Virus record (IMG/VR): IMGVR_UViG_3300042516_005475
Location: 62,001-126,000 of that record
Reading direction: 5' to 3' (one strand)
Length of the DNA stretch: 64,000 nt
The notes under the pieces were generated by a model. That model saw nothing but the letters and a program-made list of their open reading frames with translations, made no database searches and had not been told where the DNA came from. Positions 17,097-42,982 of the stretch are shown here, one piece after another. A program made the translations under genes and the position numbers. Within the stretch, counting starts at the first letter, position 1, and every line of letters begins with the position of its first letter.

Positions 17097-19409
17097 ATGG
17101 TTTGCTCTGTACCTAACTTAACTGGATCTTTTGGAAGCTGCGCGCAAGACATTGTTGCAAGCGATTTTAACAAAGATTCTGTGTTTTGGTATATAGAAAA
17201 TGAAGATTCTGTATACAATTTTAAGCTAACTCTCTGCCCTTTCCTATCAGCTACACCATTAAAAATTGTTTATCCAGAAATTGAAATTTTTAATTTAAAG
17301 ACGTTTAATAAAACATACGCTTTCCCTTCATTTAACACAGTTGACGAGCAATCTTTTCCAAGTTTACTACCATTCTCTGTTAATAGCTTACCAAGCGGAG
17401 CAGAGTATAATATAAAAAGTATAGACCAACCAGTATTAAGTTACAACTCAATTAATAACATTTTTGATTTATCTTTTATTGGTAGATTTCCTGCTGGAGT
17501 AGAGGGTTTATCAATTTTTAATTACCGTTTCTTAAAGAATAATCAGACAGTTAATCCTTACGCAATAAACATTTATACTCCAAGTCAGTTTATTTTCTCT
17601 TCTAACTTTGCTGATGGTTATTTCTCTAAGTTCTTAGATTTACAAACATATCCTAAGAGTGTTGGTTTTTATGTGTTGCCCCTTTCAGTTAATACAATAG
17701 AATATCCTTGTAATTATGAACCCCCCTGCCAAAGTATTACAGCTGTTCACAATTTAGCTAATGACAGCTTAAAGTTTAACTCTGCTAGTGTTGATACTTT
17801 AAGCACATTTGGTAACAATGTTACTTTTTTAAACTATGTTTGCGGTTTTAACCCTGATAAAGACATACAGATAGTATTTGATGCTGCAGCTTATATTTTT
17901 AATAATGAGCAGGTTTTAGGTACAGTTAATAGTACAGAAATTTGTTCTGCTAGAACAGTTACTAATTTTACTAGAGGGGGAGCAGGAGAAGGTTTTTGTG
18001 TTTATTTTTACCAATTAACAAGCTTTGCTGATTTTATTGGTTCAGGACCAGCTTCTTGTTTTGGCTATGCTCCTGGCTCAGCTGTTGATGTAGACTACTT
18101 AAACGGAACACCTATGATGTTTCCGTTTGGTATGTATGGTGGTTATTTGGGGTTAGGTTTTGATATTGGTGGAGATTTCGGTACTCGTTTACATGGAAAA
18201 AGTGCTGTTGGGTCTGCTTCTCCTAATGCAAAACGTCCAAACACTATTACATTAAGAAGCAGTCAATTAGATAATTTTAATGTTTTAACAACAACAAATA
18301 ATTTAACAGCATACAATTTATATCTTGCACAACAAGTCACTTCTGTAGATGAAGTTAAGTTTAACACCTACAAAGTTGTATTAGATAATCACGGCAAAAG
18401 AATTAGAGCAAGTGTATTAGATTGTCTTTCAAACGAGTTTATAGATATTTTTTGCTATGAGGTTGACTTTGCAGATGGCTGTGATGCTTCTCCTTCAATT
18501 TTATTTCCTGGAATAAGCTTTTCTACAAGTGAATATACATGTAATTTTGAAATTAAAAATGTTTCATTTATAGGAGCCTTAGCTGACACTGAAGCAGATG
18601 CTTGTGGTAGAGTGCGTATACCAACACCAACTCCAACCTGCCCAATCTTCCTGCTATCTCCTACACCTACACCAACAAGTTCTGTTACACCAACACCAAC
18701 ACCTTCAATATCAGTATCTTCTACAGTTACACCAACTGTCACACCTACAAATACAGTAACCCCAACTTTAACACCTACAAAAACAGTTACACCTACAAAT
18801 ACTGTTACACCTACTCCTACTTTAACTCCTTTATACTCCCCAACCCCAACAAGTACTGCAACTCAAACAGTTACACCTACACCTACCATTACCCCAACTT
18901 TAACAGTTACACCTACAAAAACAGTTACACCTACACCTACCATTACCCCATCAGTAACAGTTACTCCAACACCATCCCCTGCTGCAACAAATGTGTATTG
19001 TTGGTTTACTCCTTCAATTTACATTTATCTTTCTAGCTTTGCCTCTTGTAGAGCTTATTTTACTGCTAATGGTATTTCTGAGCAATCAGGTGGAGTTATT
19101 ATTAGGAGTAATATTGCGGCGCTGGGTGGTATTGATTTAACCAAGATATTAAGATTTATTTTCAATAGACTGCCAACTGTTTCAAATATTTCTAGTACTA
19201 ATAATTGGGGTATATATGGATCAACTACACCAAACTATTATGTAAACTACACATACGATTCTGGTAATAATGATTATACTGTTGACATTTATAGAACAAG
19301 CGATAATGCTAATATTGCCAGTATTTCAAGCTTATCGTTCGTAAATAATGATGCAGCTCAGGAATCGTTTATAGCCTGCCAGTGTTTGTATGTAGCCTTA
19401 TACGTATAA
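17097..19409 (+). CDS. Putative virion adhesin: L-type lectin-like domain + Thr/Pro linker + Cys-containing C-terminal domain
   Basis: [11 protein letters not shown]...GPASCFGY...[14 protein letters not shown]...PNTITLR resembles bacterial L-type lectin domains. TPT repeats at about 18621-18980. C-terminal domain is shared with the 3533-aa protein. Confidence 0.65.
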
Positions 19410-19410
19410 T

Positions 19411-21150
19411 ATGAATAGAGTAAGCTCAAATTTTTATTTTGCCCCATCTTCAACCCAGACAAATTATCTTTCGTCTGGTAACCTAAGCGCTTTCTCTACT
19501 ACTAACTTTTCTCTTTCTACTGATGGTTTAACTAATCTTGTTTTAAGCTTATCAAATGTTCAAGAAAATTTTGACAGATATCAAAAGGTATTAGTTGATT
19601 GGGGTCAAGGCAAGGAGTATTATGAGGCTACAATTAACCCAATTTCTACTCAATCTATAAGTGATTTTATTTTTCAAAACTTTTTTACTACATCTTCTAC
19701 TAATGACCCGAACACCTTTAACGTTTCATTAAGTTTATTTAGATTGCCTTTTAATAATGTTTTTGATACAATTAATATTGATCTTAACATTTTTCAACCA
19801 AGCTTTACTGACGAGTATAATATAAAGTTATTAAAAAACTATAACTATTATGACCCAGATACTAAGATTAATAATTTAGTATTATTTATTGAGCAGCAAA
19901 ATAATAATGGTATTTCTGTTGTTTATAATGAGATAGGTAATAATTTAACTAATTTTGTTGATACAAGAATTAGTGCAGCTCTTGTAAATTTTGTACCAGA
20001 TGTTTCCGTAGAAGGCATCGCTGAGTATCATTTAAGTGCTTGTGATTGTAACGGATTACTAGCAGTAAATAGAGCCTCTGATGGTGTAGGACCAGCAATG
20101 GTAATTGTTACAGCCTTAACAGCAGACTTTTTATATACTTCTAGCACTAATACAGTTTATTATCCAGTAACAGGTTTTACATATTCAGCCTTGACTGAAA
20201 CAGCTAAAGTGATTAATTGGAGCTCTAATGAAACAGGTATAAAGTACTTCTCGGTACCGATTTATGTACCTGACTTATATGTAAATACACCTCAGTTCTT
20301 CTTAGTAACAATTGAAAATCTTTTTAACACTTTTGTTGACCCAACTTCAACACAGGCGTTTGTATTATTAGACCCATATTCTGATTGTATGTTAGATATG
20401 GAACCATGTGGAGTTGCTCCTATACCATCCCCAACAGTTACACCTACAATCACTCCTACAAATACAATCACTCCTACAATCACACCTACAATCACACCAA
20501 CGACTGGTTTATCTCCAACTGTTACCCCAACTGTAACCCCAACTAAAACTGTAACCCCAACTGTAACCCCAACTAAAACTGTAACCCCAACTTCTACCCC
20601 TACAGCTACCCCAACTGTAACCCCAACAAAGACATTAACACCTACTAACACAGTTACACCACCAGCTACAGTCACGCCAACAGTTACACCAACCACAACA
20701 CCACCAGCTACAGTTACACCAACAGTTACAGTCACCCCAACCGCAACACCACCAGCTACAGTTACACAAACAGTTACAGTTACTCCTTCACCAACACCTC
20801 AAGATCCAACATGCGCAGAGGCTTTGCAATTAGTCACCCTTACAGTTTATAACCCTTTCTCGGCAACTGTAACAGATTTAACTTGGTCAATTAATGACAC
20901 TGAAGAATCTCAGATGGCTATTTTTGCTACTCAACCGCTATCTGTTAGCCAATATGGAAACCCAACAATTGGAATAGTACGGTCTTGTTGTACTTTTGAT
21001 GATCCAACATGGAAAATAACATTCTACTGGACAAGCCCTGATGGGAAAGGACCCCAAAACTTTGTATTCCCTGATGATGTTTCTGATGGACCTTGGACAG
21101 TTTGTACATATGGAGCGCTATATAGTACATGGCAGGTCAATCTTAGCTAA
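19411..21150 (+). CDS. Putative virion protein: Calx-beta-like domain + Thr/Pro linker + Cys-rich C-terminal domain
   Basis: VINWSSNETGIKYFSVPIY...FLVTIEN resembles Calx-beta. TPT repeats at about 20420-20800. Confidence 0.55.
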   Translation: MNRVSSNFYFAPSSTQTNYLSSGNLSAFSTTNFSLSTDGLTNLVLSLSNVQENFDRYQKVLVDWGQGKEYYEATINPISTQSISDFIFQNFFTTSSTNDPNTFNVSLSLFRLPFNNVFDTINIDLNIFQPSFTDEYNIKLLKNYNYYDPDTKINNLVLFIEQQNNNGISVVYNEIGNNLTNFVDTRISAALVNFVPDVSVEGIAEYHLSACDCNGLLAVNRASDGVGPAMVIVTALTADFLYTSSTNTVYYPVTGFTYSALTETAKVINWSSNETGIKYFSVPIYVPDLYVNTPQFFLVTIENLFNTFVDPTSTQAFVLLDPYSDCMLDMEPCGVAPIPSPTVTPTITPTNTITPTITPTITPTTGLSPTVTPTVTPTKTVTPTVTPTKTVTPTSTPTATPTVTPTKTLTPTNTVTPPATVTPTVTPTTTPPATVTPTVTVTPTATPPATVTQTVTVTPSPTPQDPTCAEALQLVTLTVYNPFSATVTDLTWSINDTEESQMAIFATQPLSVSQYGNPTIGIVRSCCTFDDPTWKITFYWTSPDGKGPQNFVFPDDVSDGPWTVCTYGALYSTWQVNLS

Positions 21151-21183
21151 TTGAAAAATAATTAAGGTGGTATAAATCCTCGT

Positions 21184-22473
21184 ATGAGTTCCGCCTCTAA
21201 CGATAAGATTTTTTGCCAAATAGCTGCATATAGAGACCCCCAACTAATCCCAACGCTTAGAAGCATGATTGACAATGCTTCGAACCCAGACAACCTTGTA
21301 TTTTGTATTGCCTGGCAACGCGACAAGAGAGATGAGTTTGATAATCTAGAGATTTTTAGCCAGGATCCTAGATTTATTATTATTGAAATTCCTGCTATGG
21401 AGAGCAAAGGAGCCTGTTGGGCTCGTAACTTAATCCAGCAGCGCTATAATGGGGAAGGTTATACTCTTCAAATTGACAGCCACATGCGCTTTGTAAAAGA
21501 TTGGGACAGTAAATGCATCAGTATGATTAAGCAGCTACAAGAAACTGGCTATGAAAAGCCTTTGTTAACAAGCTATGTTAGCTCTTTTGACCCTGATGAT
21601 GATACTAAGTTTGTAAAAGAGCCATGGAAGATGAAGTTTGATCGCTTTATTCCAGAAGGAGCAATATTCTTCTTACCTGAAACAATTGATGAATGGCAGC
21701 ACTTAACAACACCTGTAAAGGCTAGATTCTATTCAGCTCACTTTTGCTTTACTTTGGGCACAATGTGTCAAGAGGTTCCACATGACCCAAATTATTATTT
21801 CCATGGTGAAGAAATTTCAATTGCTGTAAGAGCCTTTACTCACGGCTATGATTTATTCCACCCACATATGATTATTTGCTGGCATGAATATACTCGTAAG
21901 GGTAGAACCAAGCATTGGGATGACCACGTTGAGTCAAATAAAGAGGTGGTACCGTGGCATATTCGTAACAATGATTGCCACAAGCGTAATAGATGCTTGT
22001 TTAGCATGGATGGTGAGAAACATGAGTCTGTTGATTGGGGTATGTATGGTTTTGGTACTAAGCGTACTCTAAAAGATTATGAGGACTATGCTGGTATTAA
22101 TTTTAAGCTAAGACTTGCTCATAAGTTTACTACAGACAATGTTGATTATCCTCCTAATCCAATTGTTTATAAGAATGATGAAGAGTGGAAGTCTAAGTGC
22201 TTGAAGAATTACGACATACAGGTTCAGATAAAAGAAGAATATGAAAATAACCCAGACGTTCTATTTTGGTTCTTTGGAGTTCACAACGCCTCTGGAGATG
22301 AATTGTTCAGAAAAGACTTTACCTATGATATGTTAGAGAAGATTAGAAATGAGAACATTAAGTCTGAACTTGTAACAATTCGCACTAATGATAAGCCCGC
22401 TAAGTATATTATTTGGGTGCACAAGAAAGAAACCGGTTGGGGGCAAAGATTTGAAATACCAATTAACGTATGA
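21184..22473 (+). CDS. GT60-family (Pfam GlcNAc; Skp1-hydroxyproline / mucin-type alpha-GlcNAc transferase-like) glycosyltransferase
   Basis: IFCQIAAYRDPQL, SKGACWAR, YTLQIDSHMRF (DSH metal motif), VPHDP..YFHGEEI..AVRAFTHGYDLFHP...WHEY.R. Confidence 0.85.
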   Translation: MSSASNDKIFCQIAAYRDPQLIPTLRSMIDNASNPDNLVFCIAWQRDKRDEFDNLEIFSQDPRFIIIEIPAMESKGACWARNLIQQRYNGEGYTLQIDSHMRFVKDWDSKCISMIKQLQETGYEKPLLTSYVSSFDPDDDTKFVKEPWKMKFDRFIPEGAIFFLPETIDEWQHLTTPVKARFYSAHFCFTLGTMCQEVPHDPNYYFHGEEISIAVRAFTHGYDLFHPHMIICWHEYTRKGRTKHWDDHVESNKEVVPWHIRNNDCHKRNRCLFSMDGEKHESVDWGMYGFGTKRTLKDYEDYAGINFKLRLAHKFTTDNVDYPPNPIVYKNDEEWKSKCLKNYDIQVQIKEEYENNPDVLFWFFGVHNASGDELFRKDFTYDMLEKIRNENIKSELVTIRTNDKPAKYIIWVHKKETGWGQRFEIPINV

Positions 22474-24146
22474 ATAACGAAGTAACATTTGTAACAGGTC
22501 TTTGGGATTTAGGTAGAGATAAAATTGGAGGTGGTTTTAGGAGAGATTTTAACTCTCATTACCTGCCACAATTTCAAAACTTACTTGCTCAAAATATTAA
22601 TTTAATTATTTTTTGTGATAAAGATGTAGAAGAGTTTGTGTGGAGACATAGAGAACCTCGTAACACCCTTGTTATTAACAAACCTCTTGAATCCTTTAAA
22701 ACAAATTTTGATTTTTACAATCAAGTCCAGAATATTCGTAACAAACCTGAATGGAAAAATCAGGCTGGTTGGTTAGCTGACAGCCCGCAGAGCTCTCTTG
22801 AATATTATAACCCAGTTGTAATGAGTAAGTTCTTTATGTTGCATGATAGCTGCATAATGAACCCATTTAATACTGAGCATTTTTATTGGATTGATGCAGG
22901 TATTTCATCTACTGTTAACCTAAGTTATTTTTCAACATTTAATGTTCATAATAAACTTTCAAAATACATTTCCAGTTTATTGTTTGTTTGTTTCCCGTAT
23001 GATGGACAAGTAGAAATTCATGGGTTTACTAAGAGTAAATTTAATGAGTGCTGTAATGCTGACTCACAATATGTTGCAAGAGGTGGTTTTTTTGGTGGTA
23101 AGAGTGACTATATTAAGAAGTTTAACCCCAAATATTATGATACTCTTCGCTCTACTTTAAGTGAGGGTTATATGGGTACAGAGGAGAGTATTTTCACAAT
23201 TCTTTGCTATCTTTACCCAGAAGATATTTGCAGAGTAATGATTGAAGATAATGGTTTGCTTAATACTATATTTGAGGCTCTTAAAAACGACTCTATTGTA
23301 GTAGAAAGACCTATAAACTCTAAAAATTTTAAAATTCCAACATTAGAAGAGATTAAAATTTATGTATTAACATTCAATAGCTGCTCACAACTTGAATTGC
23401 TATTAAACAATTTTACTATTACGTATCCTGAATTGATATCAATTAAAGATAAAGTATTAATTAACAATAGTACAGAAAGAAGCTATGATGAGTGCTATAA
23501 AGAAATAGCTGATAAATATGGGTTCACTATTCAAAACTTCGACAACATTGGTATTTGTGGCGCGCGTCAATGGGTAGCTGAAGATTTTGAAAAATCTGAT
23601 AAGAGTTATTATATCTTCTTTGAAGATGATATGTTGTTTAATACTGATTTTACTTATTGTAAGAATGGTTTTAGCACCAAAGCTAATGATTTGTTTAACA
23701 AGAGCCTTAAAATTGTTGAAAAAGAAGCATTAGACTATCTTAAAATAAGCTTTTCAGAGTTTTTTGGTGGTAATAACCAACAGTGGGCTTATTGTAATGT
23801 GCCTCAGCAAGTAAGGCTAGATAATTTTGGTGATTTAAAGCTACAATTTCCAAGAGATTATGACAAGATTCCAGGGACTGTTACTTATTCTATAGGCTCT
23901 TTTGAAGGATTGCCATATGCTATTGGGGAGTTTTACTATTGTAACTGGCCATTACTGTTCACAAAACAAGGCAATCGCAAGGTTTTCCTTGATACTAAGT
24001 GGGGACACCCGTATGAACAAACATGGATGTCGTATGTATTTCAGGAGCAGCGTAAGAAAAACATAAAGGCTGGTTGTTTGTTACTCTCTCCAATAGCTCA
24101 TAACAGAGTTTATTTCTATAAAGCACAGGATAGAAGAGAGAGCTAA
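22470..24146 (+). CDS. Bifunctional glycosyltransferase: HtrL/YibB-like N-domain + GT-A (GT2-like) C-domain
   Basis: N-half TFVTGLWDLGR...YNPVVMSKF...NPFNTEHFYWIDAG...GGFFGG...GTEESIFT. C-half NIGICGARQW...YYIFFEDDM (DxD-like). Overlaps the GT60 stop (ATGA). Confidence 0.75.
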   Translation: MNNEVTFVTGLWDLGRDKIGGGFRRDFNSHYLPQFQNLLAQNINLIIFCDKDVEEFVWRHREPRNTLVINKPLESFKTNFDFYNQVQNIRNKPEWKNQAGWLADSPQSSLEYYNPVVMSKFFMLHDSCIMNPFNTEHFYWIDAGISSTVNLSYFSTFNVHNKLSKYISSLLFVCFPYDGQVEIHGFTKSKFNECCNADSQYVARGGFFGGKSDYIKKFNPKYYDTLRSTLSEGYMGTEESIFTILCYLYPEDICRVMIEDNGLLNTIFEALKNDSIVVERPINSKNFKIPTLEEIKIYVLTFNSCSQLELLLNNFTITYPELISIKDKVLINNSTERSYDECYKEIADKYGFTIQNFDNIGICGARQWVAEDFEKSDKSYYIFFEDDMLFNTDFTYCKNGFSTKANDLFNKSLKIVEKEALDYLKISFSEFFGGNNQQWAYCNVPQQVRLDNFGDLKLQFPRDYDKIPGTVTYSIGSFEGLPYAIGEFYYCNWPLLFTKQGNRKVFLDTKWGHPYEQTWMSYVFQEQRKKNIKAGCLLLSPIAHNRVYFYKAQDRRES

Positions 24147-24158
24147 ATAAATATTAAT

Positions 24159-25061
24159 ATGGCTGATGATACAGAATATATTTCAGATCTAGAACCGATA
24201 CTAGAACTAGCCCCAACTGATAGTTTTCCAGTAGAAACTCTAGAGGGTACTAAGAGAATAGAGTTTAAAGATGTTATTCTCGGTCCAGACAACATTAGCT
24301 TTTACGAAGAGGTAGCAACAAATACACTGGCAATTGTTGTACTATCGTCTGAAGTTTTAGATCTTGATGCGAGTGTCACCAACATTAACTCCGGTTTAAC
24401 TGGCTTATCTGCAGCATATGATGAAGCAATTAAGAGCGGTTTTTGCTATGTTAGCTTCAATGATGCAGGTACTTTATCAGTATTAGCTAGCTCTTCTAAC
24501 GTAGCGGGTATTATATCAACTGATGGTGGTTCTAGAATTCAAATTACAGGTAATAATGTTTCTAATTTAATTTTTGCTTCAATAAATGTTACATTAAACA
24601 ACAATATTTCAGCCTCTACTTCTACAGATGACTTCTTAACATATACACCAGTAATTGACAGTAGAACTTCTAATACATTTAAAGTTGGTATAAATTCAGT
24701 ATTGAATCATTTTACAACAGTTTCTTTACCAACAGCTATTAACGTTACCTCTGAAGCCTTTAGTCCAATTACAAGCTTAAATGTTACCCCAGCTTCTATT
24801 ACACCTGTAACACAGGTTGTACCTACATCTGTCTCAGTATTATTAAACCCTACTGGTAACGGTAACGTAGTTGAATCTATTGCAGTAACTAACTTACCTT
24901 CCGCAATAGTTGAAACAGTTACTGGTAATACAACAACTAAAAACATTGTAAGTAATGTAGCTGTAACTGATACCTCGTTTAATTTATCTTTAATTACAGA
25001 TCAAGGCAGTGGTTTACCTTTAAGAAATACAGAAATTAATATCTCTTTTAGATACAGATAA
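24159..25061 (+). CDS. Putative fibre/virion structural protein
   Basis: N-terminal ISDLEP.....TDSFPVET..GTKRI resembles common phage fibre N-termini; T/S/V-rich; TAAATA-N5-ATG upstream. Confidence 0.55.
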   Translation: MADDTEYISDLEPILELAPTDSFPVETLEGTKRIEFKDVILGPDNISFYEEVATNTLAIVVLSSEVLDLDASVTNINSGLTGLSAAYDEAIKSGFCYVSFNDAGTLSVLASSSNVAGIISTDGGSRIQITGNNVSNLIFASINVTLNNNISASTSTDDFLTYTPVIDSRTSNTFKVGINSVLNHFTTVSLPTAINVTSEAFSPITSLNVTPASITPVTQVVPTSVSVLLNPTGNGNVVESIAVTNLPSAIVETVTGNTTTKNIVSNVAVTDTSFNLSLITDQGSGLPLRNTEINISFRYR

Positions 25062-28000: not shown

Positions 28001-28597
28001 TTTAACTATTATGTGTCAGATGTAGCAGGGGATGTAGAAAAGATTACTTTACAGGCTAATTTAGAAACATTAGCTAACCAAGATTTATTCTTTACATTTA
28101 CTTTTAATTCTCTTACTGGTGGTTCTAAGCTCTATATTAATAGTATCTTGGTTGAAGAATCTGATACTACTAATATTAAGTATTCCAAGACCCCTATCTC
28201 TGGTTCTATAGCCTTAAATTCTATTTCATTGACTGACCCAGCCTTTGAGTCTACTCAATTCAAGTGTCAAAACCTTGAGATGTACGGTATAAAGGCCTTC
28301 AACACAGTGTTATCAAAATATGATATTAGAAATCTGTTTATTAGATCAGCTAGAATTACAGATATAAACTGGAACGTTCCAGCAGGCAAGAGAAACATAA
28401 CTGAAACCATTCAGCAGAACTTTAAGTTTAGTTTACCAGGTTATAAGACCAACTTGTTTGATATTATTGTTTCAGGAGCTCAAGGATTAAACGATGTACA
28501 AAGAGAAGCAATTGCTGAAAAAATAAGAGAGTACATAAAGGGTAACATTCCGATAAATACTATTATTAACGAGGTTAACATCAGAAGTAATGAATAA
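25061..28597 (+). CDS. Large virion structural protein (beta-rich; LamG-like segment near C-terminus)
   Basis: 1178 aa, TAATG-coupled; FFTFTFNSLTGGSKLYINSILV resembles LamG/ConA strands. Confidence 0.55.
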   Translation: MNVLNLSALIPMEVEYSLDGNVNLTNNITNYFYGLNLYSTELFNFARDLSINYYNTFILTDKLDKPDFLTLSEPITASYPKTISTTVQCVGLSSTGLGFWEDYAANYSSTSPYLSCGEGIFSTGSIWNLGSWNMYDIEFLNANQCYISKLRNNNSVLTQLQTKEYLGPAFTEDVNYLTFSSTPYTFNYIYNEQNNTIVFYFNYAPNGSSSNSLFLITQEENRVVLKSVDEYVISDLGLYNLSAVFCLSYRDANTRLAEFTTNYNAYKRTYFPTAETSLCDSYDGLKNNYLVSSNVVFTDNKFLVNFQPLKNQLDLNYNFTATNSFIGQPFDNRDYQSIVSGTDQELGFPNLTLTFYTYNAPITFKKGALTYFHFPVSATPFDKLNVNDSTLVDCGSFAGQNPLDADKVFKKLLPTVAGNNIDKNQTGTYLCTWLYISAFDSRPIWMDRYYNPNFTSLQTAYTQNFNSDFVNTVTTLSAKNFTYFDKVSDLTFEPNSTYSYYRLSEADIARINNNLYENQINSDVINVYDANLNLQQAGAASFEYGFNTGSLVQKTSASGDYSICFNIKSKDFKKKFGNTLLNNFYNLNGLNITNYDNLNNLILFTSGSEIVVSNTNFDSLRNVKVLLEKSIFKTPDALLSIDFNNNVEGFYVTSISTLSSNVGINLNVGPNTSDFYLSKLDKNFTTLNTILLTSFSGGTYNFVSSNIDDTYYYALFNTFNTQVAATNQNYFLIKYPLSGMLLSQPINTPVNLQLPRYGSVNGNSITISDFTLCRSTYNFILSAGLPVYYLTDYANNSICSDVNNRAWYIYNNILYHSVTDLGNLDGFNLSYLKDSNNNQTITNVTTDNSGNIYLISDNGTDSYLYKLDNNRKPIYFQSLSSSFGAPTTKYLDILYVNNNGVIEPRPYVIYDPYQPSSLSARSFKEVNVFDASGNLIYIKPLEYETDTFNISNQNRKGFRRTLSNVEQVNNLFEVDGNPIKFNYYVSDVAGDVEKITLQANLETLANQDLFFTFTFNSLTGGSKLYINSILVEESDTTNIKYSKTPISGSIALNSISLTDPAFESTQFKCQNLEMYGIKAFNTVLSKYDIRNLFIRSARITDINWNVPAGKRNITETIQQNFKFSLPGYKTNLFDIIVSGAQGLNDVQREAIAEKIREYIKGNIPINTIINEVNIRSNE

Positions 28598-35300: not shown

Positions 35301-38300
35301 GAGTAGGTACTGAAAGATCGCAACTTGCTGCTGCAAGCTATGGTTTTGATAAGGCTATTTTTGGTTATGGTGGTGGTCCATCCAACGCCTACAATAATGT
35401 TTCTACTTTAGTAAACAATTTAGGTGTAGTAGTTACTGATCAATTAGGTGTTGGTACTGGCAGAAAAGGTCTAGCAGCAGCTGGTTATGGTTACGATAAG
35501 GCGATTTTTGCTTTTGGGCGAACCTCTTCTGGAAATGTAAATATTTCAAATCTTGTGACTAATTTTGGTGTTATTGGCACAGATAATGCAAGTGTAGCCA
35601 CTTCTAAAGAAAACTTAGCAGCAGCTGTTTATGGTTACGATAAAGCAATTTTTGCATATGGTAGTAATTCAGGTGTTACAAATACAACCAACATTGTTTC
35701 AAATCTAGGAGTAATTTCTACAGATACAGCAGGAGTAGGAACAGCAAGATCAAGTCTCGCAGCAACAGGTTATGGCATGGATAAGGCAATATTTGGTTTT
35801 GGCTCTACAACTATTAATGTAAATATTACCTCGTTATTTTCAAATACAGGCTCTTATGTTAGTGAGAGTTCTGGTGTCGGTACTGCTAGAATTTATCTAG
35901 CAGCCACAGGTTACAATCAAGATAAAGCAATATTTGGTTTTGGTTTCGCTGGATTCTTTGCCTCCATGACAAATCTTGTTTCTAATATTGGCAATATTGC
36001 TGCTGATAATAGTACAGTAGGTACTGGAAGGTATGGGTTAGCTGCTGCAAGATTTGGTGGTATACTTCCAACTCCAACAGCTACTCCAACAGTTACTCCA
36101 ACAGTTACTCCAACTACCGGGCTATCTTCTACTCCAACTAATACAATTACACCAACTAATACAGTAACACCTACAATAACACCTACAATAACACCTACAG
36201 TAACACCTACCAATACAGTTACACCTACAATCACTCCAACGATTACTCCTACTCCAGCACCAATACAAAATTATAGTGGTATTTTTGGTTTCGGTACAAG
36301 TACTTCTGGAGGGAATACATCAATTACTAATTTATTAGTATCTAACATTGGTATTCTTGAAAATGATGTAACTACTGTTGCTACTGCCAGAAGTGAATTA
36401 GCAGCAGCAACTTACGGTACAGATAAAGCCATATTTGCTTTTGGGTATATTAACTCTGTCGGTGTTCAAAATATATCTAATTTAGTAACTAATGAGGGAG
36501 TTGTTGGAACCGATCAATCAACAGTAGGTACTTCTAGAAACCGTCTTGCAGCAGCTGGTTATGGTATAGATAAAGCTATTTTTGGTTACGGTTATAATGG
36601 AGGCTATTTGTCATTGACAAATATAGTTACTAATACCGGTGTTGTTGGTAGTGATCAAGGGGGGATTGGTACTGCTAGAGCTGATCTAGCAGCTGCTACT
36701 TTTGATAGAGATAGGGCAATTTTCGGTTTTGGAACTAATAACACTAATTTGTCAATGACAAATATAGTTACTAATACCGGTGTTGTTGGTAATGATGTAT
36801 CAAGTATTGGTACTGCTAGAAGAGGTCTAGCAGCTGCTACTTATGATGTAAATAAAGTTATATTTGGTTTCGGTAGTGTAGGAATTAGTGCTCCTGTATC
36901 AATAACCAATTTGGTTTCTAATACTGGTATTGTTGCTTCTGATACCTCTAATGTTCAAACAGCTAGAAGCGGTCTTGCTGCAGTAAGTATTGGTACTGAT
37001 AGAGCTATGTTTGGTTTTGGCTTTAGTAATACTGCTACAAATATTACAAATCTAATTAGTAATTTAGGAACAATTGTTACAGAAAATTTTGGTACTGGCA
37101 CTACAAGATACAGTCTAGCAGCTGCGAGCTTTGTTTATGTAGCCCCTACACCTTCCCCAACAATTACTCCAACAATTACTCCAACAATTACTCCAACAAA
37201 TACAGTAACACCAACTAATACACCTACCAATACAGTAACACCTACAGTTACACCTACCAATACAGTTACACCAACGAATACACCACCAAATACACCACCA
37301 CCTCAATCAGATAAGAGCGCAATATTTGGATATGGTACCAATGGTAGTTTTGGAAATAACTTATCAATGACCAATTTAGTATCTAACGCTGGTGTTGTTA
37401 CTATAGATCAAACCGGGGTTGGAACTGCAAGATATGGTTTAGCTGCTGCAAGCTATGGTGGAGACAAGGCAATATTTGGATATGGTTATGTTTCAGCTGG
37501 GTCTGGAGTACAGAATATAACCAACAAAGTTTCAAATCTTGGTATAGTTGCTAATGATGATGCTGGTGTCGGTACTCAAAGATTCTATTTAGCTGCAGCT
37601 ACCTATGGTACTGATAAAGCAATATTTGGATATGGTCAAAATAGTTCATTTGTTGGAGTTACAATAACCAATTTAGTGAATAACATTGGTAATGTTGCTT
37701 CAGACGTAACTAGTGCTGGTACTGCAAGAAGCGCATTAACATCTGCTAGCTACGGTTACGATAAGGCAATATTTGCTTTAGGTAACGGAAGTGTAATTAA
37801 TAAGATTTCAAACACTGGTATTGTTGCTTCAGATTCAAGTGGTACACCTCCAACAGCTCGAAATGGTGCTTTCGGTGCTGGGTATGGTTATGATACAGCT
37901 ATACTTGGTTTTGGTTATGATGGAACACATTTAAATACTATAACACTAATTAACAACCAAGGAGACGTTGTCACTAATACTACTGGAGGTGGTTCTTCTA
38001 GAGCTTTTGGTGCTTCAGCAAGCTATAGTACTGATAAGGCAATATTTGGTTATGGTAGTACTACTAGTTCTGCTTCGTCTGTAATAACTCTTATTTCAAA
38101 CACAGGTACAGTCGCATCAGAATCATCCGGAGTTGGTACAGCAAGAAGCAGTCTAGCTGGAGCAAGCTATGTTTCTGGTATTGCTCCGTCACCTACAGCT
38201 ACAACAACAATTACACCAACAGTAACACCTACCAATACAGTTACACCAACCAACACAGTAACACCAACTAACACACCAACTAACACAGTTACTCCAACAG

Positions 38301-41300
38301 TTACAGTTACACCAACCAATACAGTTACACCAACAAACACAGTTACACCAACTAACACAGTTACACCAACAATTACCCCAACTAATACAGTTACAGTTAC
38401 ACCTACTAACACAGTAACACCTACTAACACAGTAACACCAACACCTACGAGTACACCAGGTGCTTCTGTAACACCAACAGCTACTCCATTTGCTTTAACA
38501 AATAAAAATGCAATATTTGGTTTTGGACAAAATAATAGTGGCTCTCCCGTTTCTATGACTAACATAGTAGCTACTAATGGTAATGTGGCTTCAGATGTAA
38601 CTAGTGTTAATACAGCAAGAAGTGGTTTGGCTGCAGCTAGCTATGGTGGAGATAAGGCAATATTCGGATATGGTTATTCTAATACATTTGTTTCTATTAC
38701 TAACTTAGTTTCCGGTGCTGGTGTTGTTGCTTCAGATGTATCTAGTGCTGGTACTGCTAGATGGGCCTTAGCTGCAGCAAGTTTTGGTACTGATCAAGCG
38801 ATATTTGGTTACGGTTATAATGGTGCAGGTATTTCTATAACTAATAAAGTTTCTAACACTGGTATTGTTTCTTCTAATAATAGTACAGTTGGCTCAGCAA
38901 GAGGTAGATTAGCGGCAGCAGGTTATGGTTATGATAAAGCAATATTCGGTTATGGTTATATTTTTGAAAGCTTTGCATATGTTTCTATCTCTAATTTAGT
39001 ATCTAATACAGGTAATGTTGCTGCAGATGTTACAAATGCCGGTTCAAGACAATACCTAGCTGCGGCTGGATATGGTGGAGATAAAGCTATTTTTGGTTTT
39101 GGTGACTTTGGTAGTTATACAAATATTACAAACAAGGTTTCAAACACCGGTATTGTTGCAGCTAATACAAATGTTACTGGTACAGCTAGAAATGGTCTAG
39201 CAGCTGCTAGCTATAGTACAAATTTAGCAATATTTGGTTATGGTTATACCGGTTCAGCGTTATCAATGACCAATAAAATAAATTCAGATGGGGATGTAGC
39301 TTCTGATATAACTGGGGTTGGTACAGCTAGATATTATTTAGCTGCAGCAAGTTTTGGTCCTGAAATAATACCAACCCCAACAACTACTGCTTCAAACACA
39401 CCGACTAATACAGTGACCCCTACAGTTACACCAACTAACACAGTAACTCCAACTAACACAGTAACTCCAACCAATACTGTTACCCCTACAAATACAGTTA
39501 CACCAACTAACACTGTAACTCCAACTAACACTGTTACTCCTACAAATACAGTTACTCCAACAATTACACCAACTAATACAGTTACACCAACTAATACAGT
39601 TACTCCAACCATTACAGTTACACCAACAAACACACCAACTAACTCTGTTACACCAACAGTTACAGTTACTCCAACAATTACACCAACAATTACACCTACA
39701 CAAGATAATACATATTGCTTCCAAACTCCAGTACAAACTGTATATTTAAATAACTTTGATATTTGTCAAAATTATATAAAAGACCAACTTTTTGCCTCAA
39801 ATCTTCAATCAAGAGGGGCTTCTGATCTTCGAAAAATTCTCCTTTATATTACTCAAGTACTACCAACTACAAGCAACATATTAAATAATTCTAACTGGGG
39901 AGACTTTGGTACTACTAACGCTGCTTATAGTGTAATTTACACTTTTAATGGAATAGTTGGCGGTAAAAATCAATATTATGTATCAATAGAATGGTCATAT
40001 TCTGGTAATGTTGAACCCTATCAAATAGCTTATATTAGCTATCTATCATATAATAATAATACTGGTCAATGCGCGATTGATATGTGCTTGTTGAATGTTA
40101 TTCAATATTTTAATGTAACACCAACCCCAACAGTTACACCAACAGTTACAGTAACTCCAACCAATACAGTAACACCAACAAATACAGTTACACCAACAGT
40201 TACACCAACCACTACAGTAACCCCAACAAATACTGTTACCCCTACTGTTACCCCTACTGTTACAACGACAACTGGTTTATCTCCTACAATTACCCCTACA
40301 ATTACTCCAACAAACACTGTAACTCCAACAATTACACCAACCAATACAGTAACACCAACAATCACACCAACCAGCACAGTTACTCCTACAAATACTGTTA
40401 CTCCTACAAATACTGTTACACCTACAAATACTGTAACTCCAACCAATACAGTAACACCAACAGCTACTGTAACTCCAACTATCACTGTTACACCAACTAA
40501 TACAGTAACTCCACCCAATACTGTTACTCCAACCATTACAGTTACACCAACAATCACACCAACTAACTCTGTTACACCAACAATCACACCAACCAATACA
40601 ATCACACCAACAATTACACCCACACAAGATAACACATATTGTTTTCAGACTCTTAGAGTCCCAGTATATTTAAACAGCTTTGCAAGTTGTCAGGGTTATA
40701 TTTCTGGCTTAATTAGTTCTTCTAACATTGGTTCAAGAGGAGCAACAGATATTGTTAAGATTCTACGATACATTGTTAATAACTATAACCCTAGTGTTAA
40801 TATTTTAAATAATACAGACTGGGGAATTTATGGAACAACTGGTGGTGCTTATAGTGTACTTTATACTTATAATGGAATAGTATCTGGTAACAATGAATAT
40901 TATGTTTCTATTGAGTACACAACAGGGACACAGCAAATTCAAGTTGCTTATATCAGCTGGATGACTACAAATCTATCCCCTGGTTCTTGTATATTTGACA
41001 TGTGTTTAATTAATATTCTAACTTTTACTAATATTGATCCAACACCTACCCCAACTCCATCAGTAACTCCAACCAATACAGTAACTCCAACAAATACAGT
41101 TACACCAACCAACACAGTAACTCCAACTAATACAGTTACACCAACCAACACAGTAACACCAACAATTACACCAACTAATACAGTTACACCAACAGTTACA
41201 CCAACTAATACAGTTACACCAACCAACACAGTAACGCCAACAATTACACCAACTAATACAGTTACACCAACTAATACAGTTACACCAACAGTTACACCAA

Positions 41301-42982
41301 CTAATACAGTTACACCAACCAACACAGTAACGCCAACAATTACACCAACCACCACAGTAACGCCAACAATTACACCAACTAATACAGTTACACCAACAAT
41401 CACTCCCACAATTACACCTACACAAAAGAATACATATTGCTTCCAGTCTCCGGATACTGAACCATACATTAATAATTTTGCCGATAGTAAGAATTATATA
41501 ATTAATGCTATTGATTCTTCTAATATTGCTTCAAGAGGCGCAACTGATATAGCTAAGATTCTTAAGTTTGTTGTAAGCAGACTATATTTAGTTGGAAATA
41601 TATTTAATAATTATAGTTGGGGAGCATATGGTACAACTTCAGCAGCCTATAACGTAGTTTTCACTAATTTCGGTCCAGAGGGTAGCAATCAGAAATATTA
41701 CTTTGAAATTCAGCCAAGTTATGTAACACCAACTCAATATATTGCATATTGTTCATATTTGTTCTTCAATATGAATACTGGTACAATGTTAGTTGATATG
41801 TGTTTACTTAATATTTTTGATTATAGTAACTTCCCAGCAACACCAACACCTACAATTACTGTTACTCCAACTCAATCGTTAACACCAACTAATACAGTTA
41901 CACCAACTAATACAGTTACACCAACTATAACTCCAACCAAAACAGTTACCCCTACACCAAATAGTACCTTAACTACTCCAACTACCCCAACTTTAACTCC
42001 AACCAAGACAGTTACACCAACAGTTACAGTAACACCAACAGTAACTGTAACACCAACAGTAACTGTAACACCAACAGTAACCCCAACAGCCTCTCCTGTT
42101 TTAACAAATAAACAAGCTATTTTTGGTTATGGTCAAGGGGATAGCGGTATACTTTCAAAATCTAACACAGTTACAAATCTTGGTGTAGTTAATATAGATC
42201 AAACCGGGGTTGGAACTGCAAGATATGGTTTAGCTGCTGCAAGTTACGGTGGAGATAAGGCAATATTTGGATATGGCGCAAGTGATATTAAGCTTTCTAT
42301 AACCAATACTGTTACAAATCTTGGTATAGTTAATGCTGATCAAGCAGGAGTTGGTACAGCAAGACTTTATTTAGCTGCTGCAAGTTATGGTGGAGATAAG
42401 GCAATATTTGGCTTTGGCTTCGATGGAGGTTATACAAGTACAACCAACACTGTTACAAATCTTGGTATTGTTAATTCAGATACAAGTAGCGTAGCCACAT
42501 CAAGAGCTAATTTAGCTGCTGCAAGTTATGGTGGAGATAAAGTAATATTTGGTTTTGGAGCAACATACTCAGCGGGTAATGTTTTCTATAATAAAACCTC
42601 ACTATTTTCTAATACAGGTGTGTATGTTAGTGAAACTGACAATATTGTAACTGAAAGAGGTTTCCTCGCTGCAGCTGGTTACGGAACAGATAAAGCAATA
42701 TTTGCTTATGGTTTTAATAATAGCGGGTTCCTTTTATTAACTAATAAAGTTACAAATACAGGCACTCTTGGTTCAGATACTACTGTTGCCGGTACTGCTA
42801 GATACGCTTTAGCAGCAGCTGGTTATGGTGGAGATAAGGCGATATTTGGGTTTGGTTTCTCAAGCGACTATAGTGTTGTTAATACTACTACCTTATTTGA
42901 CAATCAAGGTAATTTTGTTAGTGAAAATTCTGGGGTTGGTACTGCAAGATACGATCTTGCAGCAGCAAGCTTTGGTAGCTAA
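32381..42982 (+). CDS. Giant (3533 aa) mucin-like multidomain protein: six Kelch-like 6-bladed propellers, three YCFQ domains, nine Thr/Pro linkers
   Basis: Continuous ORF. 36 copies of a ~47-aa unit AIFG(F/Y)G...TN.VSNTG.V..D...VGTAR..LAAA.YG.DK, in groups of six separated by TPTNTV arrays. Confidence 0.8.
32951..33890 (+). repeat. Degenerate coding tandem repeat (18-nt TPTNTV and 12-nt TPTI/TPTV units), longest of the Thr/Pro arrays
   Basis: Recurring ACACCAACYAAYACAGTW units. Similar arrays at about 18621-18980, 20420-20800, 31170-31920, 34787-35182, 36068-36260, 37144-37300, 38185-38487, 39371-39700, 40118-40625, 41039-41422 and 41840-42095. Confidence 0.95.

What the first reader, a model, noticed from the sequence alone, without database searches (positions are those of the whole stretch)
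17097..42982. Candidate phage-encoded mucin-type O-glycosylation system: GT60 + HtrL/GT-A genes inside a block of Thr/Pro mucin-like virion proteins
Seen: four large co-oriented genes downstream of the baseplate operon (17097, 19411, 28590, 32381) carry long TPT/TPTNTV arrays totalling well over a thousand residues. Two overlapping glycosyltransferase genes (21184-24146) sit between them. Established: the motifs of 21184-22473 (YRD, QIDSH, FxGEE) are those of GT60, whose characterised members add alpha-GlcNAc directly to protein (Dictyostelium Gnt1 on Skp1 hydroxyproline; trypanosome OGNTs on mucin Thr). Inference: the phage primes its own Thr/Pro linkers with the GT60 and extends the glycan with the HtrL/GT-A fusion. 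This would give stiff, protease-resistant bottle-brush stalks presenting binding domains, i.e. a virion glycocalyx. The GT9 and the oxygenase elsewhere in the window may belong to the same pathway.
Basis: partly seen in the sequence, partly recalled or inferred. Interest (0 to 1): 0.9.

Follow-up and report, generated by a model that had tools for sequence, protein, structure and literature searches.

The report
Phage cassette for glycosylating Thr/Pro fibres
A large lake-water phage carries two sugar-adding enzymes, one from the family that starts mucin-type sugar coats in protists, inside a block of fibre genes holding about 1,800 residues of Thr-Pro repeats; the same enzyme-repeat pairing recurs in many other phages and some bacteria, so the phage probably sugar-coats its own fibres, though nobody has yet shown this chemically.

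Summary
Four co-oriented genes (17097, 19411, 28590, 32381) carry 13 Thr/Pro arrays totalling 1,840 residues. Between them sit a true GT60/PF11397 enzyme (21184-22473, E=8e-73, invariant DxH) and an HtrL_YibB + GT-A fusion (22470-24146).

- In 52 dereplicated viral loci with a GT60 homologue at 50-54% identity, 45 have a Thr/Pro array within 3 kb.
- Array density falls from about 45 residues/kb next to the cassette to about 2 beyond 6 kb.
- A weaker version holds in bacterial chromosomes. There the neighbour is often a small protein with a Tat-type signal that is almost entirely TP array.

The AF2 model's best solved-structure matches are animal polypeptide GalNAc-transferases. XacN1, a cultured phage with the same cassette, has PAS-stained virion glycoproteins.

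Best reading: soluble, signal-less enzymes perform mucin-type O-glycosylation of the phage's own fibre linkers (confidence about 0.6). No chemistry has been shown, and the sugar, the acceptor residue (Thr or Hyp) and virion location are inferred.

The P4H-like oxygenase is real, but it lies beside a collagen-like fibre gene and no homologue was found in the other GT60 loci. This is a new variant of a known kind.

The parts
10402..10440 (+). Two copies of the T4-type late-promoter octamer TATAAATA, directly upstream of gp25. They may mark the start of one long late block.
   Evidence: only 3 copies on the + strand in 64 kb, two of them here. The next is at 45693. All genes from 10449 to 45437 are on + with overlaps or short gaps. 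Co-transcription is inferred.
10449..12738 (+). Baseplate wedge genes gp25 (10449-10928) and gp6 (10930-12738).
   Evidence: PF04965 at E=8e-15. phrog_219 at E=7e-35. tblastn gives 28% identity to cyanophage gp6.
12738..17065 (+). Two array-free ORFs (777 and 664 aa) between the baseplate genes and the first TP gene. They are presumed baseplate or fibre-attachment proteins.
   Evidence: No family hits. No cultured-phage homologue of the 777-aa ORF. The 664-aa ORF is 61% identical and syntenic in relative L287.
17097..19409 (+). TP protein 1 (770 aa): a 505-aa N-terminal domain, a 128-aa array (nt 18612-18995) and a 137-aa C-terminal module.
   Evidence: The N-terminal domain is 57% identical in L287, where the array is 171 aa.
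19411..21150 (+). TP protein 2 (579 aa): a 330-aa N-terminal domain, a 139-aa array (nt 20401-20817) and a 110-aa C-terminal module.
   Evidence: Its L287 orthologue is 1,605 aa with six arrays.
21184..22473 (+). GT60-family glycosyltransferase (429 aa), soluble, with no signal peptide or TM segment. A GT-A catalytic domain carrying DxH (D98-S-H100) is followed by a conserved C-terminal alpha/beta domain of about 95 aa. Proposed initiating polypeptide HexNAc-transferase.
   Evidence: PF11397 at E=8e-73. phrog_24687 at E=5e-159. AF2 model pLDDT 88. The Foldseek PDB top 26 hits are all polypeptide GalNAc-transferases, E=5e-11 to 2e-8. BFVD hits are 'Glycosyltransferase, GlcNAc' of uncultured phages, Megaviridae and Pandoravirus.
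22470..24146 (+). Two-domain glycosyltransferase (558 aa): N-terminal HtrL_YibB, C-terminal GT-A/GT2-like with an invariant EDD. Proposed glycan-extending, possibly bifunctional, enzyme.
   Evidence: PF09612 at E=8e-16. The atlas finds GT2/HtrL viral clusters. EDD 385-387 is invariant. AF2 pLDDT 77. Best PDB matches are tandem GT-A enzymes: LH3, LARGE1, COLGALT1, PmHS2 and K4CP. It is linked to GT60 in 78 of 83 loci.
24159..28597 (+). Two array-free ORFs (300 and 1,178 aa) inside the block, function unknown.
   Evidence: No family or cultured-phage hits. Conserved and syntenic in L287 at 32% and 49% identity.
28590..32318 (+). TP protein 3 (1,242 aa): a 711-aa N-terminal domain, arrays of 37 and 267 aa (nt 30723-30833 and 31149-31949) and a 122-aa C-terminal module.
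   Evidence: The L287 orthologue is 46% identical and has a single 59-aa array.
32381..42982 (+). Giant beads-on-a-string protein (3,533 aa): a 184-aa N-terminal domain, nine arrays (65-326 aa), six modules of about 283 aa made of roughly 47-aa repeats (141-nt period), and three modules of about 123 aa.
   Evidence: The atlas places the 283-aa module among all-viral clusters; a structure search seeded with the best cluster's model finds Kelch- and PLL-like beta-propellers (a lead only). In L287 only the 185-aa N-terminal domain exists, as a 196-aa protein. The distal part is therefore an add-on.
46665..46818 (+). tRNA-Val(UAC) and tRNA-Pro(UGG). They may support translation of the arrays.
   Evidence: The arrays use CCA for 71% of Pro codons against 45% in other genes. 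The link is inferred.
59893..60675 (+). P4H-like 2OG-Fe(II) oxygenase.
   Evidence: PF13661 at E=4e-19 and PF13640 at E=3e-13. It follows the collagen-like fibre 54443-58564 (PF01391) and a tail assembly chaperone. tblastn found no homologue in the GT60 loci held.

Best explanation
**Proposed mechanism.** A phage-encoded mucin-type protein O-glycosylation cassette acts in the host cytoplasm, where virions assemble.
1. Late in infection the soluble GT60 enzyme (21184-22473) transfers a HexNAc onto the Thr residues of the TPTxTx arrays. The sugar is most likely alpha-GlcNAc from UDP-GlcNAc.
2. The arrays link the globular modules of four fibre-like proteins encoded around the enzyme.
3. The translationally coupled two-domain HtrL/GT-A enzyme (22470-24146) then extends the primer.

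**Proposed result.** Long, extended, glycan-coated spacers hold propeller-type and other small modules away from the particle. In total there are about 1,840 array residues carrying 794 Thr.

**Shown:**
- the family membership of both enzymes;
- the arrays themselves;
- tight GT60 to HtrL-GT linkage;
- local co-occurrence of the cassette with TP arrays in diverged phages and in bacteria.

**Inferred:**
- the acceptor and the sugar;
- late co-expression;
- that the array proteins are on the virion;
- the physical effect of the glycans.
For: 1. **Family.** PF11397 scores 246 bits. DxH is invariant, and that motif variant is described as confined to GT27 and GT60, which share polypeptide Ser/Thr O-glycosylation (PMC7185993). 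TcOGNT1 makes GlcNAc-alpha1-O-Thr on mucin-like proteins (PMC9472816). The best solved-structure matches are polypeptide GalNAc-transferases, ahead of GlfT2 and SpsA.
2. **Co-occurrence in phages.** 45 of 52 dereplicated viral GT60 loci have an array within 3 kb. Density runs 48/43/29 residues per kb at 0-3 kb and about 2 beyond 6 kb. Of 21 flanks, 17 have an array at 0-3 kb and 2 at 6-9 kb (sign test p=6e-5). With low-complexity masking, tblastn with the window's array proteins found nothing in these loci, and their spacer residues differ (E/Q/S against V/N) while T stays near 42% and P near 21%.
3. **Reverse direction.** Of 120 viral loci picked only by a (TPTxTx)2TPT DNA pattern, 14 carry GT60 and/or the HtrL-GT within a median 9.4 kb. 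The pattern scan found only 133 GT60 relatives in 2.9 million contigs.
4. **Bacteria.** 17 of 68 chromosomal GT60 homologues have an adjacent array. By flank, 12 of 94 have one at 0-3 kb against 2 of 94 at 6-9 kb (p=0.013). Several neighbours are small proteins with a twin-arginine, Tat-type signal followed by almost pure TP array. Examples are Jiulongibacter sediminis L225 and L232, L237, L242, L262, L272 and L283. Tat export of a cytoplasmically modified protein fits a soluble GT60.
5. **Synteny.** Relative L287 (GT60 64% identical) keeps both GTs in the same slot, while array number and length change freely.
6. **Experiment.** XacN1 carries the GT60 and the HtrL-GT homologues and shows at least two PAS-stained virion bands (PMC5852040).
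7. **Local sequence context.** 753 of 792 array Thr have Pro at -1, +1 or +3. From my own knowledge, that is the context favoured by polypeptide GalNAc-transferases.
Against: - There is no biochemical or proteomic evidence for this phage.
- No characterised GT60 was aligned here. PDB sequence searches found nothing, so residue-level equivalence with Gnt1 or OGNT is untested.
- HtrL, and the GT25 and GT9 partners seen in other loci, are families named after LPS-core work.
- In L012 and XacN1 the cassette also abuts the DNA polymerase module.
- The GT-A half has a weak hit to a phage DNA glucosyltransferase family (phrog_842, E=5e-6).
- Most bacterial homologues (51 of 68) have no adjacent array. 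With a looser S/T/P criterion the bacterial enrichment vanishes into noise (17 against 14), and with a 4-7 kb control zone it is not significant (13 against 6, p=0.17).
- The loci are not phylogenetically independent, so the p-values are optimistic.
- No array protein matches a known virion protein.
Confidence: 0.6

Rival explanations
1. Same cassette and same array substrates, but linked through hydroxyproline. A prolyl 4-hydroxylase would convert array Pro to Hyp, and the GT60 would act like cytoplasmic Gnt1 (the Skp1 HyPro GlcNAc-transferase).
For: The phage GT60 is soluble and has no signal, like Gnt1 and unlike the Golgi OGNTs. The window encodes a P4H-like 2OG oxygenase. Pro is as constant a feature of the arrays as Thr.
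Against: The oxygenase lies 36 kb away, next to a collagen-like fibre gene. That gene is the simpler substrate. tblastn with it found nothing in the 83 GT60 loci held, and no P4H-like gene was seen in the bacterial cassette read in full (L225).
Confidence: 0.1
2. The cassette builds or alters a non-protein glycoconjugate of the infected cell, such as LPS/LOS core, capsule or another envelope glycan. The purpose would be superinfection exclusion or release. On this view it lies in the fibre module only because host-interaction genes cluster there.
For: HtrL_YibB, GT25 and GT9 are named from LPS-core loci. The bacterial cassettes sit beside nucleotide-sugar genes: UDP-Glc dehydrogenase and an SDR sugar enzyme in L225.
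Against: All characterised GT60 enzymes act on polypeptides. There are no flippase, polymerase or lipid-carrier genes in the window block. The array association holds in bacteria, where no tail-fibre module exists to confound it.
Confidence: 0.12
3. The enzymes glycosylate phage proteins, but not the arrays. The target would be a globular domain or a capsid or tail protein. The arrays would be plain flexible linkers that co-occur because both features belong to large freshwater phages.
For: The PAS-positive proteins of XacN1 were not identified, and XacN1 has only about 45 residues of PT linker. In mycobacteriophages it is capsid (coat) proteins that are reported glycosylated.
Against: Array density decays steeply with distance from the cassette. 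The bacterial neighbours are almost nothing but signal plus array.
Confidence: 0.1
4. The enzymes glycosylate phage DNA (hypermodified bases) to evade restriction.
For: There is a weak phrog_842 hit on the GT-A half. The cassette is next to the DNA polymerase in L012 and XacN1.
Against: The gene order is embedded in a structural block in the window and in L287. It belongs to the GT60/GT27 clade. Chromosomal bacterial homologues sit next to secreted TP proteins. None of the window ORFs scanned matched a base-hydroxymethylase family.
Confidence: 0.04

Closest known systems
GT60 polypeptide alpha-GlcNAc-transferases of protists (T. cruzi TcOGNT1/2; the Dictyostelium Golgi enzyme)
   Same: Same Pfam/CAZy family and DxH motif. 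They act on Thr-rich mucin-like repeats and make GlcNAc-alpha1-O-Thr, which other enzymes then extend.
   Different: The protist enzymes are Golgi type-II membrane proteins acting in the secretory pathway. The phage enzyme is soluble and has an extra conserved C-terminal domain of about 95 aa. Activity is untested here.
Gnt1, the cytoplasmic Skp1 hydroxyproline GlcNAc-transferase (Dictyostelium, Toxoplasma)
   Same: GT60, soluble and cytoplasmic. It primes a short glycan that other GTs extend (my own knowledge).
   Different: Gnt1 has a single Hyp acceptor on one protein and needs a dedicated P4H. Here there are hundreds of potential sites in repeats, and no homologue of the window's P4H-like gene was found in the GT60 loci.
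Animal polypeptide GalNAc-transferases (GT27)
   Same: These are the nearest solved folds, aligned over about 445 columns. GT27 is the sister family sharing DxH. The substrates are mucin tandem repeats with Pro near the Thr.
   Different: Only 10-14% identity. It is a different CAZy family, and its C-terminal ricin lectin domain is not shown to be equivalent to the phage C-terminal domain.
Mycobacteriophage virion glycosylation (Che8, Corndog, Myrna)
   Same: Phage-encoded GTs glycosylate the phage's own virion proteins (PMC12363180; PMC12582341).
   Different: The enzymes are unrelated: tblastn with the GT60 finds only four jumbo phages among 50,697 phage records. The substrate reported there is the capsid (coat) protein, not long tandem arrays.
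Xanthomonas jumbo phage XacN1 (ORF334 GT60, ORF330 HtrL-GT, ORF333 carbamoyltransferase, ORF328 GT9)
   Same: 49% and 42% identical homologues of both window enzymes sit near the baseplate genes and a 3,313-aa protein with PT linkers. The virions contain PAS-positive proteins.
   Different: Only about 45 PT-linker residues. It has extra carbamoyltransferase and GT9 genes. ORF330 was not recognised as a GT, and the substrate was never mapped.
Tandem GT-A enzymes (LARGE1, LH3/PLOD3, COLGALT1, K4CP, PmHS2)
   Same: These are the best fold matches of the HtrL/GT-A fusion, which has two GT-A-like domains in one chain. LARGE1, LH3 and COLGALT1 extend glycans on proteins.
   Different: TM is only about 0.26 over the whole chain and identity 9-11%. 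Polymerase activity is speculation.

Membership tests
CAZy GT60 / Pfam PF11397 (GlcNAc) | Match to the family HMM above the curated threshold | tested here: met
   246.3 bits against a cutoff of 21, E=8e-73, with two stretches reaching to position 350 of the 352-position profile. All 120 listed homologues carry PF11397.
CAZy GT60 / Pfam PF11397 (GlcNAc) | DxH in place of DxD (a variant described as confined to GT27 and GT60) | tested here: met
   D98, S99 and H100 are invariant in 20-22 sequences. Motif rule from PMC7185993.
CAZy GT60 / Pfam PF11397 (GlcNAc) | GT-A fold, closest to GT27 polypeptide GalNAc-transferases | tested here: met
   AF2 pLDDT 88. The Foldseek PDB top 26 hits are all GalNAc-Ts.
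CAZy GT60 / Pfam PF11397 (GlcNAc) | Transfers alpha-GlcNAc from UDP-GlcNAc to a polypeptide Thr/Ser or Hyp | not testable with these tools
   Needs an enzyme assay or glycoproteomics.
HtrL_YibB (PF09612 / TIGR02192) | Match to the Pfam domain above threshold | tested here: met
   58.8 bits against 24.1, residues 4-251.
HtrL_YibB (PF09612 / TIGR02192) | Equivalog of E. coli YibB (NCBIfam trusted cutoff) | tested here: not met
   69.8 bits against a cutoff of 264.9, and only the first 159 positions match. It is a domain-level relative, not a YibB orthologue.
Mucin-type O-glycosylation system (functional class) | Acceptor proteins with long tandem Thr/Pro-rich repeats | tested here: met
   13 arrays, 1,840 residues, T 44% and P 21%.
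Mucin-type O-glycosylation system (functional class) | Initiating enzyme genetically tied to the repeat proteins | tested here: met
   Distance-decay and flank tests in viral and bacterial loci. The bacterial signal is modest and depends on the criterion used.
Mucin-type O-glycosylation system (functional class) | O-glycans actually present on the repeats | not testable with these tools
   The only indirect evidence is PAS-positive virion bands in XacN1, whose identity is unknown.
Mycobacteriophage-type virion glycosylation | Homology of the GTs to the glycosyltransferases of the glycosylated mycobacteriophages (Che8, Corndog, Myrna) | tested here: not met
   tblastn of the GT60 against 50,697 phage records hits only XacN1, Xoo-sp13, CM1 and RAS14.
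T4-like contractile-tail baseplate module | gp25 and gp6 wedge proteins adjacent | tested here: met
   PF04965 and phrog_219.
Virion structural (fibre) proteins | Homology to proteins shown to be in virions | tested here: not met
   No PHROG, Pfam or cultured-phage hit for any array protein domain or for the neighbours tested. The assignment rests on position and architecture.

The most novel reading that the evidence does not exclude
A prokaryotic and viral mucin-type O-glycosylation pathway that operates in the cytoplasm, not in a secretory compartment. A soluble GT60 initiator works with a tandem GT-A extender, optionally joined by carbamoyl-, methyl- and GT25/GT9 modules. The pathway is widespread: more than 7,000 protein clusters, on contigs up to 487 kb. 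In bacteria it would decorate Tat-exported 'bacterial mucins'. Large freshwater phages would use it to coat hundreds of nanometres of fibre linker. It could also be the prokaryotic relative of the eukaryotic GT60/GT27 mucin machinery.
Probability: 0.45. Interest if true: 0.85.

Novelty: new variant of a known kind. Interest (0 to 1): 0.75.

Why it matters
Self-glycosylation of virions by phage enzymes is so far documented mainly in mycobacteriophages, with unrelated enzymes and with capsid proteins as the reported substrate. Mucin-type O-glycosylation is usually treated as a eukaryotic, Golgi-based process.

If this cassette does what its family and gene neighbourhood suggest, three things follow:
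- **Scale.** Very large amounts of environmental phage protein would be glycan-coated. The conserved GT60 motif region recruits up to about 50-fold extra contig depth in lake metagenomes. A coat of this kind would bear on adsorption, protease resistance, particle stickiness and viral-particle carbon chemistry.
- **A bacterial counterpart.** It points to a class of Tat-signal-bearing Thr/Pro-rich proteins in bacteria for which my literature searches found no description.
- **A tractable system.** It offers a compact two-enzyme system for cytoplasmic mucin-like glycoengineering.

The hypothesis can be tested now in cultured systems: phage XacN1 and Jiulongibacter sediminis JN14-9.

Tried and rejected
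- **PDB by sequence.** Searches with the GT60 alone and with a 22-sequence profile found nothing. No residue-level comparison with a solved GT60/GT27 enzyme was possible, so fold search was used instead.
- **HtrL fusion against PDB by sequence.** Only a chance bromodomain hit.
- **Family searches on array proteins.** Pfam and PHROGs on all globular parts of the array proteins and their neighbours found nothing usable.
- **Cultured-phage homologues.** tblastn of g25061 and g12738 against cultured phages gave no match.
- **External base-rate control.** The RNR query returned only 3 near-identical loci. I used internal distance controls instead.
- **Looser S/T/P criterion in bacterial loci.** This gave 17 proximal against 14 distal. 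It is dominated by off-frame ORFs in high-GC DNA, so I rejected it as uninformative.
- **A 4-7 kb control zone.** Not significant. It includes arrays that recur at +4-5 kb in Burkholderiales loci and may belong to the same clusters.
- **HtrL presence against array adjacency on the GT60 tree.** No correlation.
Not found with Pfam, NCBIfam or tblastn.
- **UDP-xylose synthase call for L225 6266-7237.** Below every equivalog cutoff. The LARGE1-like Xyl/GlcA idea is therefore kept only as a lead.
- **Literature.** Searches for GT60 or PF11397 in phages, or for TP repeats with jumbo-phage GTs, found no prior description.

Full report
**What is there**

The window is part of a 230-kb viral contig (IMGVR_UViG_3300042516_005475). 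The phage is seen in at least 19 lake-water metagenomes from 2020-2024. Near-identical contigs occur in independent runs.

From 10449 to 45437 every gene is on the + strand, with overlaps or short gaps. The block opens with two T4-type late-promoter octamers (10402 and 10433). Next come baseplate wedge genes gp25 and gp6.

Two array-free ORFs follow. Then the order is TP protein 1 (17097), TP protein 2 (19411), GT60 (21184), HtrL/GT-A (22470), two array-free ORFs (24159 and 25061), TP protein 3 (28590) and a 3,533-aa giant (32381). A ClpB-like ATPase (43008) comes after.

**The arrays**

- There are thirteen arrays totalling 1,840 residues.
- Composition is T 44%, P 21%, V 13% and N 8%.
- They are built from an 18-nt TVTPTN unit. 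Its copies are only 67-80% identical at the DNA level. This points to long-standing protein-level constraint, not recent slippage.
- 753 of 792 array Thr have Pro at -1, +1 or +3.
- There are no arrays anywhere else in the window.

The giant is a string of beads:
- a 184-aa N-terminal domain;
- six modules of about 283 aa made of roughly 47-aa repeats (141-nt period);
- three modules of about 123 aa;
- nine arrays of 65-326 aa separating them.

The atlas places the 283-aa module among all-viral clusters. A structure search seeded with the best cluster's model finds Kelch- and PLL-lectin-like beta-propellers. This is a lead only.

Minus-strand ORFs inside the arrays, such as 32818-33966, look like low-complexity complements rather than genes. 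I did not test this.

**The enzymes**

*GT60 (21184-22473):*
- It is an unambiguous PF11397/GT60 protein, at 246 bits against a cutoff of 21.
- The quoted motifs are present, and D98-S-H100 is invariant.
- DxH in place of DxD is described as confined to GT27 and GT60. These sister families share polypeptide Ser/Thr O-glycosylation (PMC7185993).
- TcOGNT1 of T. cruzi makes GlcNAc-alpha1-O-Thr on mucin-like proteins (PMC9472816).
- Sequence searches of the PDB found nothing.
- The AF2 model (pLDDT 88) has polypeptide GalNAc-transferases as its 26 best solved-structure matches. GlfT2 and SpsA come after them.
- In BFVD the best matches are 'Glycosyltransferase, GlcNAc' proteins of uncultured phages, Megaviridae and Pandoravirus.
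- The protein has no signal peptide or TM segment. It carries a conserved C-terminal alpha/beta domain of about 95 aa that the PF11397 match does not cover.

*HtrL/GT-A fusion (22470-24146):*
- It overlaps GT60 by 4 nt.
- It has an HtrL_YibB N-terminal half. This is a domain-level relative, not a YibB equivalog.
- Its C-terminal half is GT-A/GT2-like, with an invariant EDD.
- Its best fold matches are tandem GT-A enzymes: LH3, LARGE1, COLGALT1, PmHS2 and K4CP.

**The co-occurrence test**

*Distribution of the GT60.* The family is very large. More than 7,397 protein clusters match at E<1e-5, all unnamed, on contigs up to 487 kb. Among 50,697 phage records it occurs only in four jumbo phages: XacN1, Xoo-sp13, CM1 and RAS14.

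*Phage loci.* In IMG/VR, 133 relatives were found and 80 loci fetched.
- 78 of the 83 loci then held also carry the HtrL/GT-A fusion, 0-6 kb downstream.
- After dereplication, 45 of 52 viral loci have a Thr/Pro array within 3 kb of the cassette.
- Array density is 48, 43 and 29 residues per kb in the first three kilobases. It is about 2 beyond 6 kb.
- By flank, 17 of 21 have an array at 0-3 kb against 2 of 21 at 6-9 kb (p=6e-5).

tblastn with the window's array proteins, with low-complexity masking, found nothing in these loci. Their spacer residues differ, while T stays near 42% and P near 21%.

One example is L012, from a 321-kb contig. Its order is TP protein 1,309 aa, a 211-aa ORF, TP protein 672 aa, GT60, GT25, a 294-aa ORF, HtrL/GT-A, then DNA polymerase.

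*Reverse direction.* 120 viral loci were chosen only by a (TPTxTx)2TPT DNA pattern. 14 of them carry GT60 and/or the fusion within a median 9.4 kb. This is a lower bound, because in the window itself the far end of the giant gene lies 20 kb from the GT60.

**Bacteria**

A profile scan of one genome per species found 250 relatives at 35-57% identity in many phyla.

*How strong the signal is.*
- 17 of 68 full-length bacterial homologues have an adjacent array.
- Density falls from 10.2 to about 0.5 residues per kb.
- By flank, 12 of 94 have an array at 0-3 kb against 2 of 94 at 6-9 kb (p=0.013).

The signal is modest. It disappears with a looser S/T/P criterion. It is not significant against a 4-7 kb control zone. 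None of these tests corrects for shared ancestry.

*What the neighbours are.* They are informative: small proteins made of a twin-arginine, Tat-type signal plus almost pure TP array. They were seen in L225, L232, L237, L242, L246, L262, L272 and L283.

*The Jiulongibacter sediminis JN14-9 locus.* Its gene order is:
1. UDP-glucose dehydrogenase;
2. an SDR sugar enzyme;
3. a second, shorter GT60;
4. the TP protein with the Tat-type signal;
5. GT60;
6. a carbamoyltransferase, as in XacN1;
7. an FkbM-methyltransferase + HtrL + GT fusion.

From my own knowledge, Tat exports proteins that are folded, and so possibly modified, in the cytoplasm. That fits a soluble initiating enzyme.

**Plasticity**

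A closer relative, L287, has a GT60 64% identical to the window's. It keeps the order g15071, TP1, TP2, GT60, HtrL/GT-A, g24159, g25061, TP3, ClpB.

The N-terminal domains are 46-61% identical, but the arrays differ:
- TP2 is 1,605 aa with six arrays;
- TP3 has one 59-aa array;
- the giant is represented only by its first 185 residues, as a 196-aa protein.

Conserved N-terminal domains with exchangeable distal array-plus-module parts are what one expects of virion-anchored adhesin fibres. That reading is inference. No array protein matches any known virion protein.

**Experimental anchor**

XacN1 has 49% and 42% identical homologues of both enzymes. They lie next to its baseplate genes and a 3,313-aa protein with two short PT linkers.

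Its virions show at least two PAS-stained bands. The authors suggested that the phage GTs make them (PMC5852040). The bands were not identified. ORF330 was annotated only as a hypothetical protein.

**Side claims**

- No GT9 exists in the window. A GT9 does exist in the XacN1 locus.
- The 2OG oxygenase (59893-60675) is P4H-like. It follows a collagen-like fibre gene, a Gly-rich ORF and a tail assembly chaperone.
- tblastn with the oxygenase found nothing in the GT60 loci held. Collagen-like Pro is the simpler substrate, though a Hyp-linked variant of the model cannot be excluded.

**Rivals**

- An envelope-glycan target is suggested by the LPS-associated names of HtrL, GT25 and GT9. It does not explain the array association in bacteria.
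- DNA glycosylation is hinted at only by a weak phrog_842 hit and by the cassette's proximity to the polymerase in two loci.
- A non-array protein target remains possible, because the XacN1 glycoproteins are unmapped.

**Verdict**

The central interpretation is the best-supported reading (about 0.6), but it rests on comparative and structural inference plus one indirect experiment in a relative.

The literature searches found no description of GT60 in phages, or of its pairing with TP arrays. Phage self-glycosylation itself is known from mycobacteriophages, with unrelated enzymes. I therefore rate this a new variant of a known kind, and of high interest.

Noticed in passing
window 46665-46818 and 49252-49327: The phage encodes tRNA-Val(UAC), tRNA-Pro(UGG) and tRNA-Gly(GCC). 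These match amino acids over-used in the TP arrays and the collagen-like fibre. The arrays use CCA for 71% of Pro codons against 45% in other genes, and ACA for 59% of Thr against 42%. No tRNA-Thr lies in the window.
   Followed up: partly
window 54443-60675: A second fibre module: a 1,373-aa collagen-repeat protein (PF01391, 16 stretches), a Gly-rich ORF, a tail assembly chaperone (PF16778), then a P4H-like 2OG-Fe(II) oxygenase. This may be a phage-encoded prolyl hydroxylase for its own collagen-like fibre.
   Followed up: partly
window 21781-21938: In three lake metagenomes the summed contig depth jumps to 77-362x over the most conserved GT60 stretch (around FHGEEIS/GYDLFHP), against about 7-13x for the rest of the gene. 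Many other GT60 genes at 90% or more local identity therefore co-occur in the same waters. A metatranscriptome holds 152-259-nt contigs on the GT60 with 0-2 differences, which does not prove transcription.
   Followed up: partly
L225 8947-9735; L283 11548-12129; L232, L237, L242, L262, L272: Bacterial chromosomes encode small proteins made of a twin-arginine (Tat-type) signal plus a long TP/SP array, directly beside GT60 homologues. These are candidate Tat-exported 'bacterial mucins'. My literature searches on GT60/PF11397 did not turn up a description.
   Followed up: partly
L226 8438-9232 and L234 9212-9952: In Gemmatimonadaceae the array protein upstream of GT60 starts with a PqqD-like domain (PF05402, E=7e-6), a hydrophobic segment and then the TP array. 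PqqD-like domains are peptide-binding elements in RiPP pathways, which hints at a substrate-recruitment role.
   Followed up: no
L244, L245, L253, L254, L257, L269, L270: Burkholderiales and Dyella loci carry a GT60 match that mostly stops near residue 350, so it lacks the C-terminal domain. In five of the seven loci a ClpB/ClpV-like ATPase lies close by. In four, a 766-863-aa protein with a 61-97-residue TP array sits 4-6 kb downstream. This may be a different, secretion-system-linked use of the enzyme.
   Followed up: no
L287 19913-20503 vs window 32381-42982: In a related phage the homologue of the 3,533-aa giant is a 196-aa protein matching only its first 185 residues. The whole array-and-propeller string is a lineage-specific addition onto a conserved N-terminal domain.
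   Followed up: yes
window 10402-10440: Two T4-type late-promoter octamers (TATAAATA) lie 31 nt apart, just upstream of gp25. The octamer is otherwise under-represented in the window: 4 found against 9.6 expected.
   Followed up: partly
window 32818-33966, 34774-35241, 40102-40635, 40948-41469 (minus strand): Long minus-strand ORFs lie inside the arrays. They look like low-complexity complements of the repeats, as seen in the Gly/Val-rich minus-strand ORFs of L225 and L283, and probably should not be annotated as genes. Their translations were not checked.
   Followed up: no
window 45670-46650, 46870-47343, 61085-61723: A DUF932 protein and two HNH-endonuclease-like ORFs flank the tRNA genes and the lysozyme-like gene. 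These are typical mobile or selfish elements of large phages.
   Followed up: no
L012 11272-12889; L003 24792-27089; L225 11241-15151: The cassette is modular. A GT25, a NodU-type carbamoyltransferase, an FkbM methyltransferase or a GT9 joins GT60 + HtrL/GT-A in different lineages. The glycans probably differ and may be carbamoylated or methylated.
   Followed up: partly
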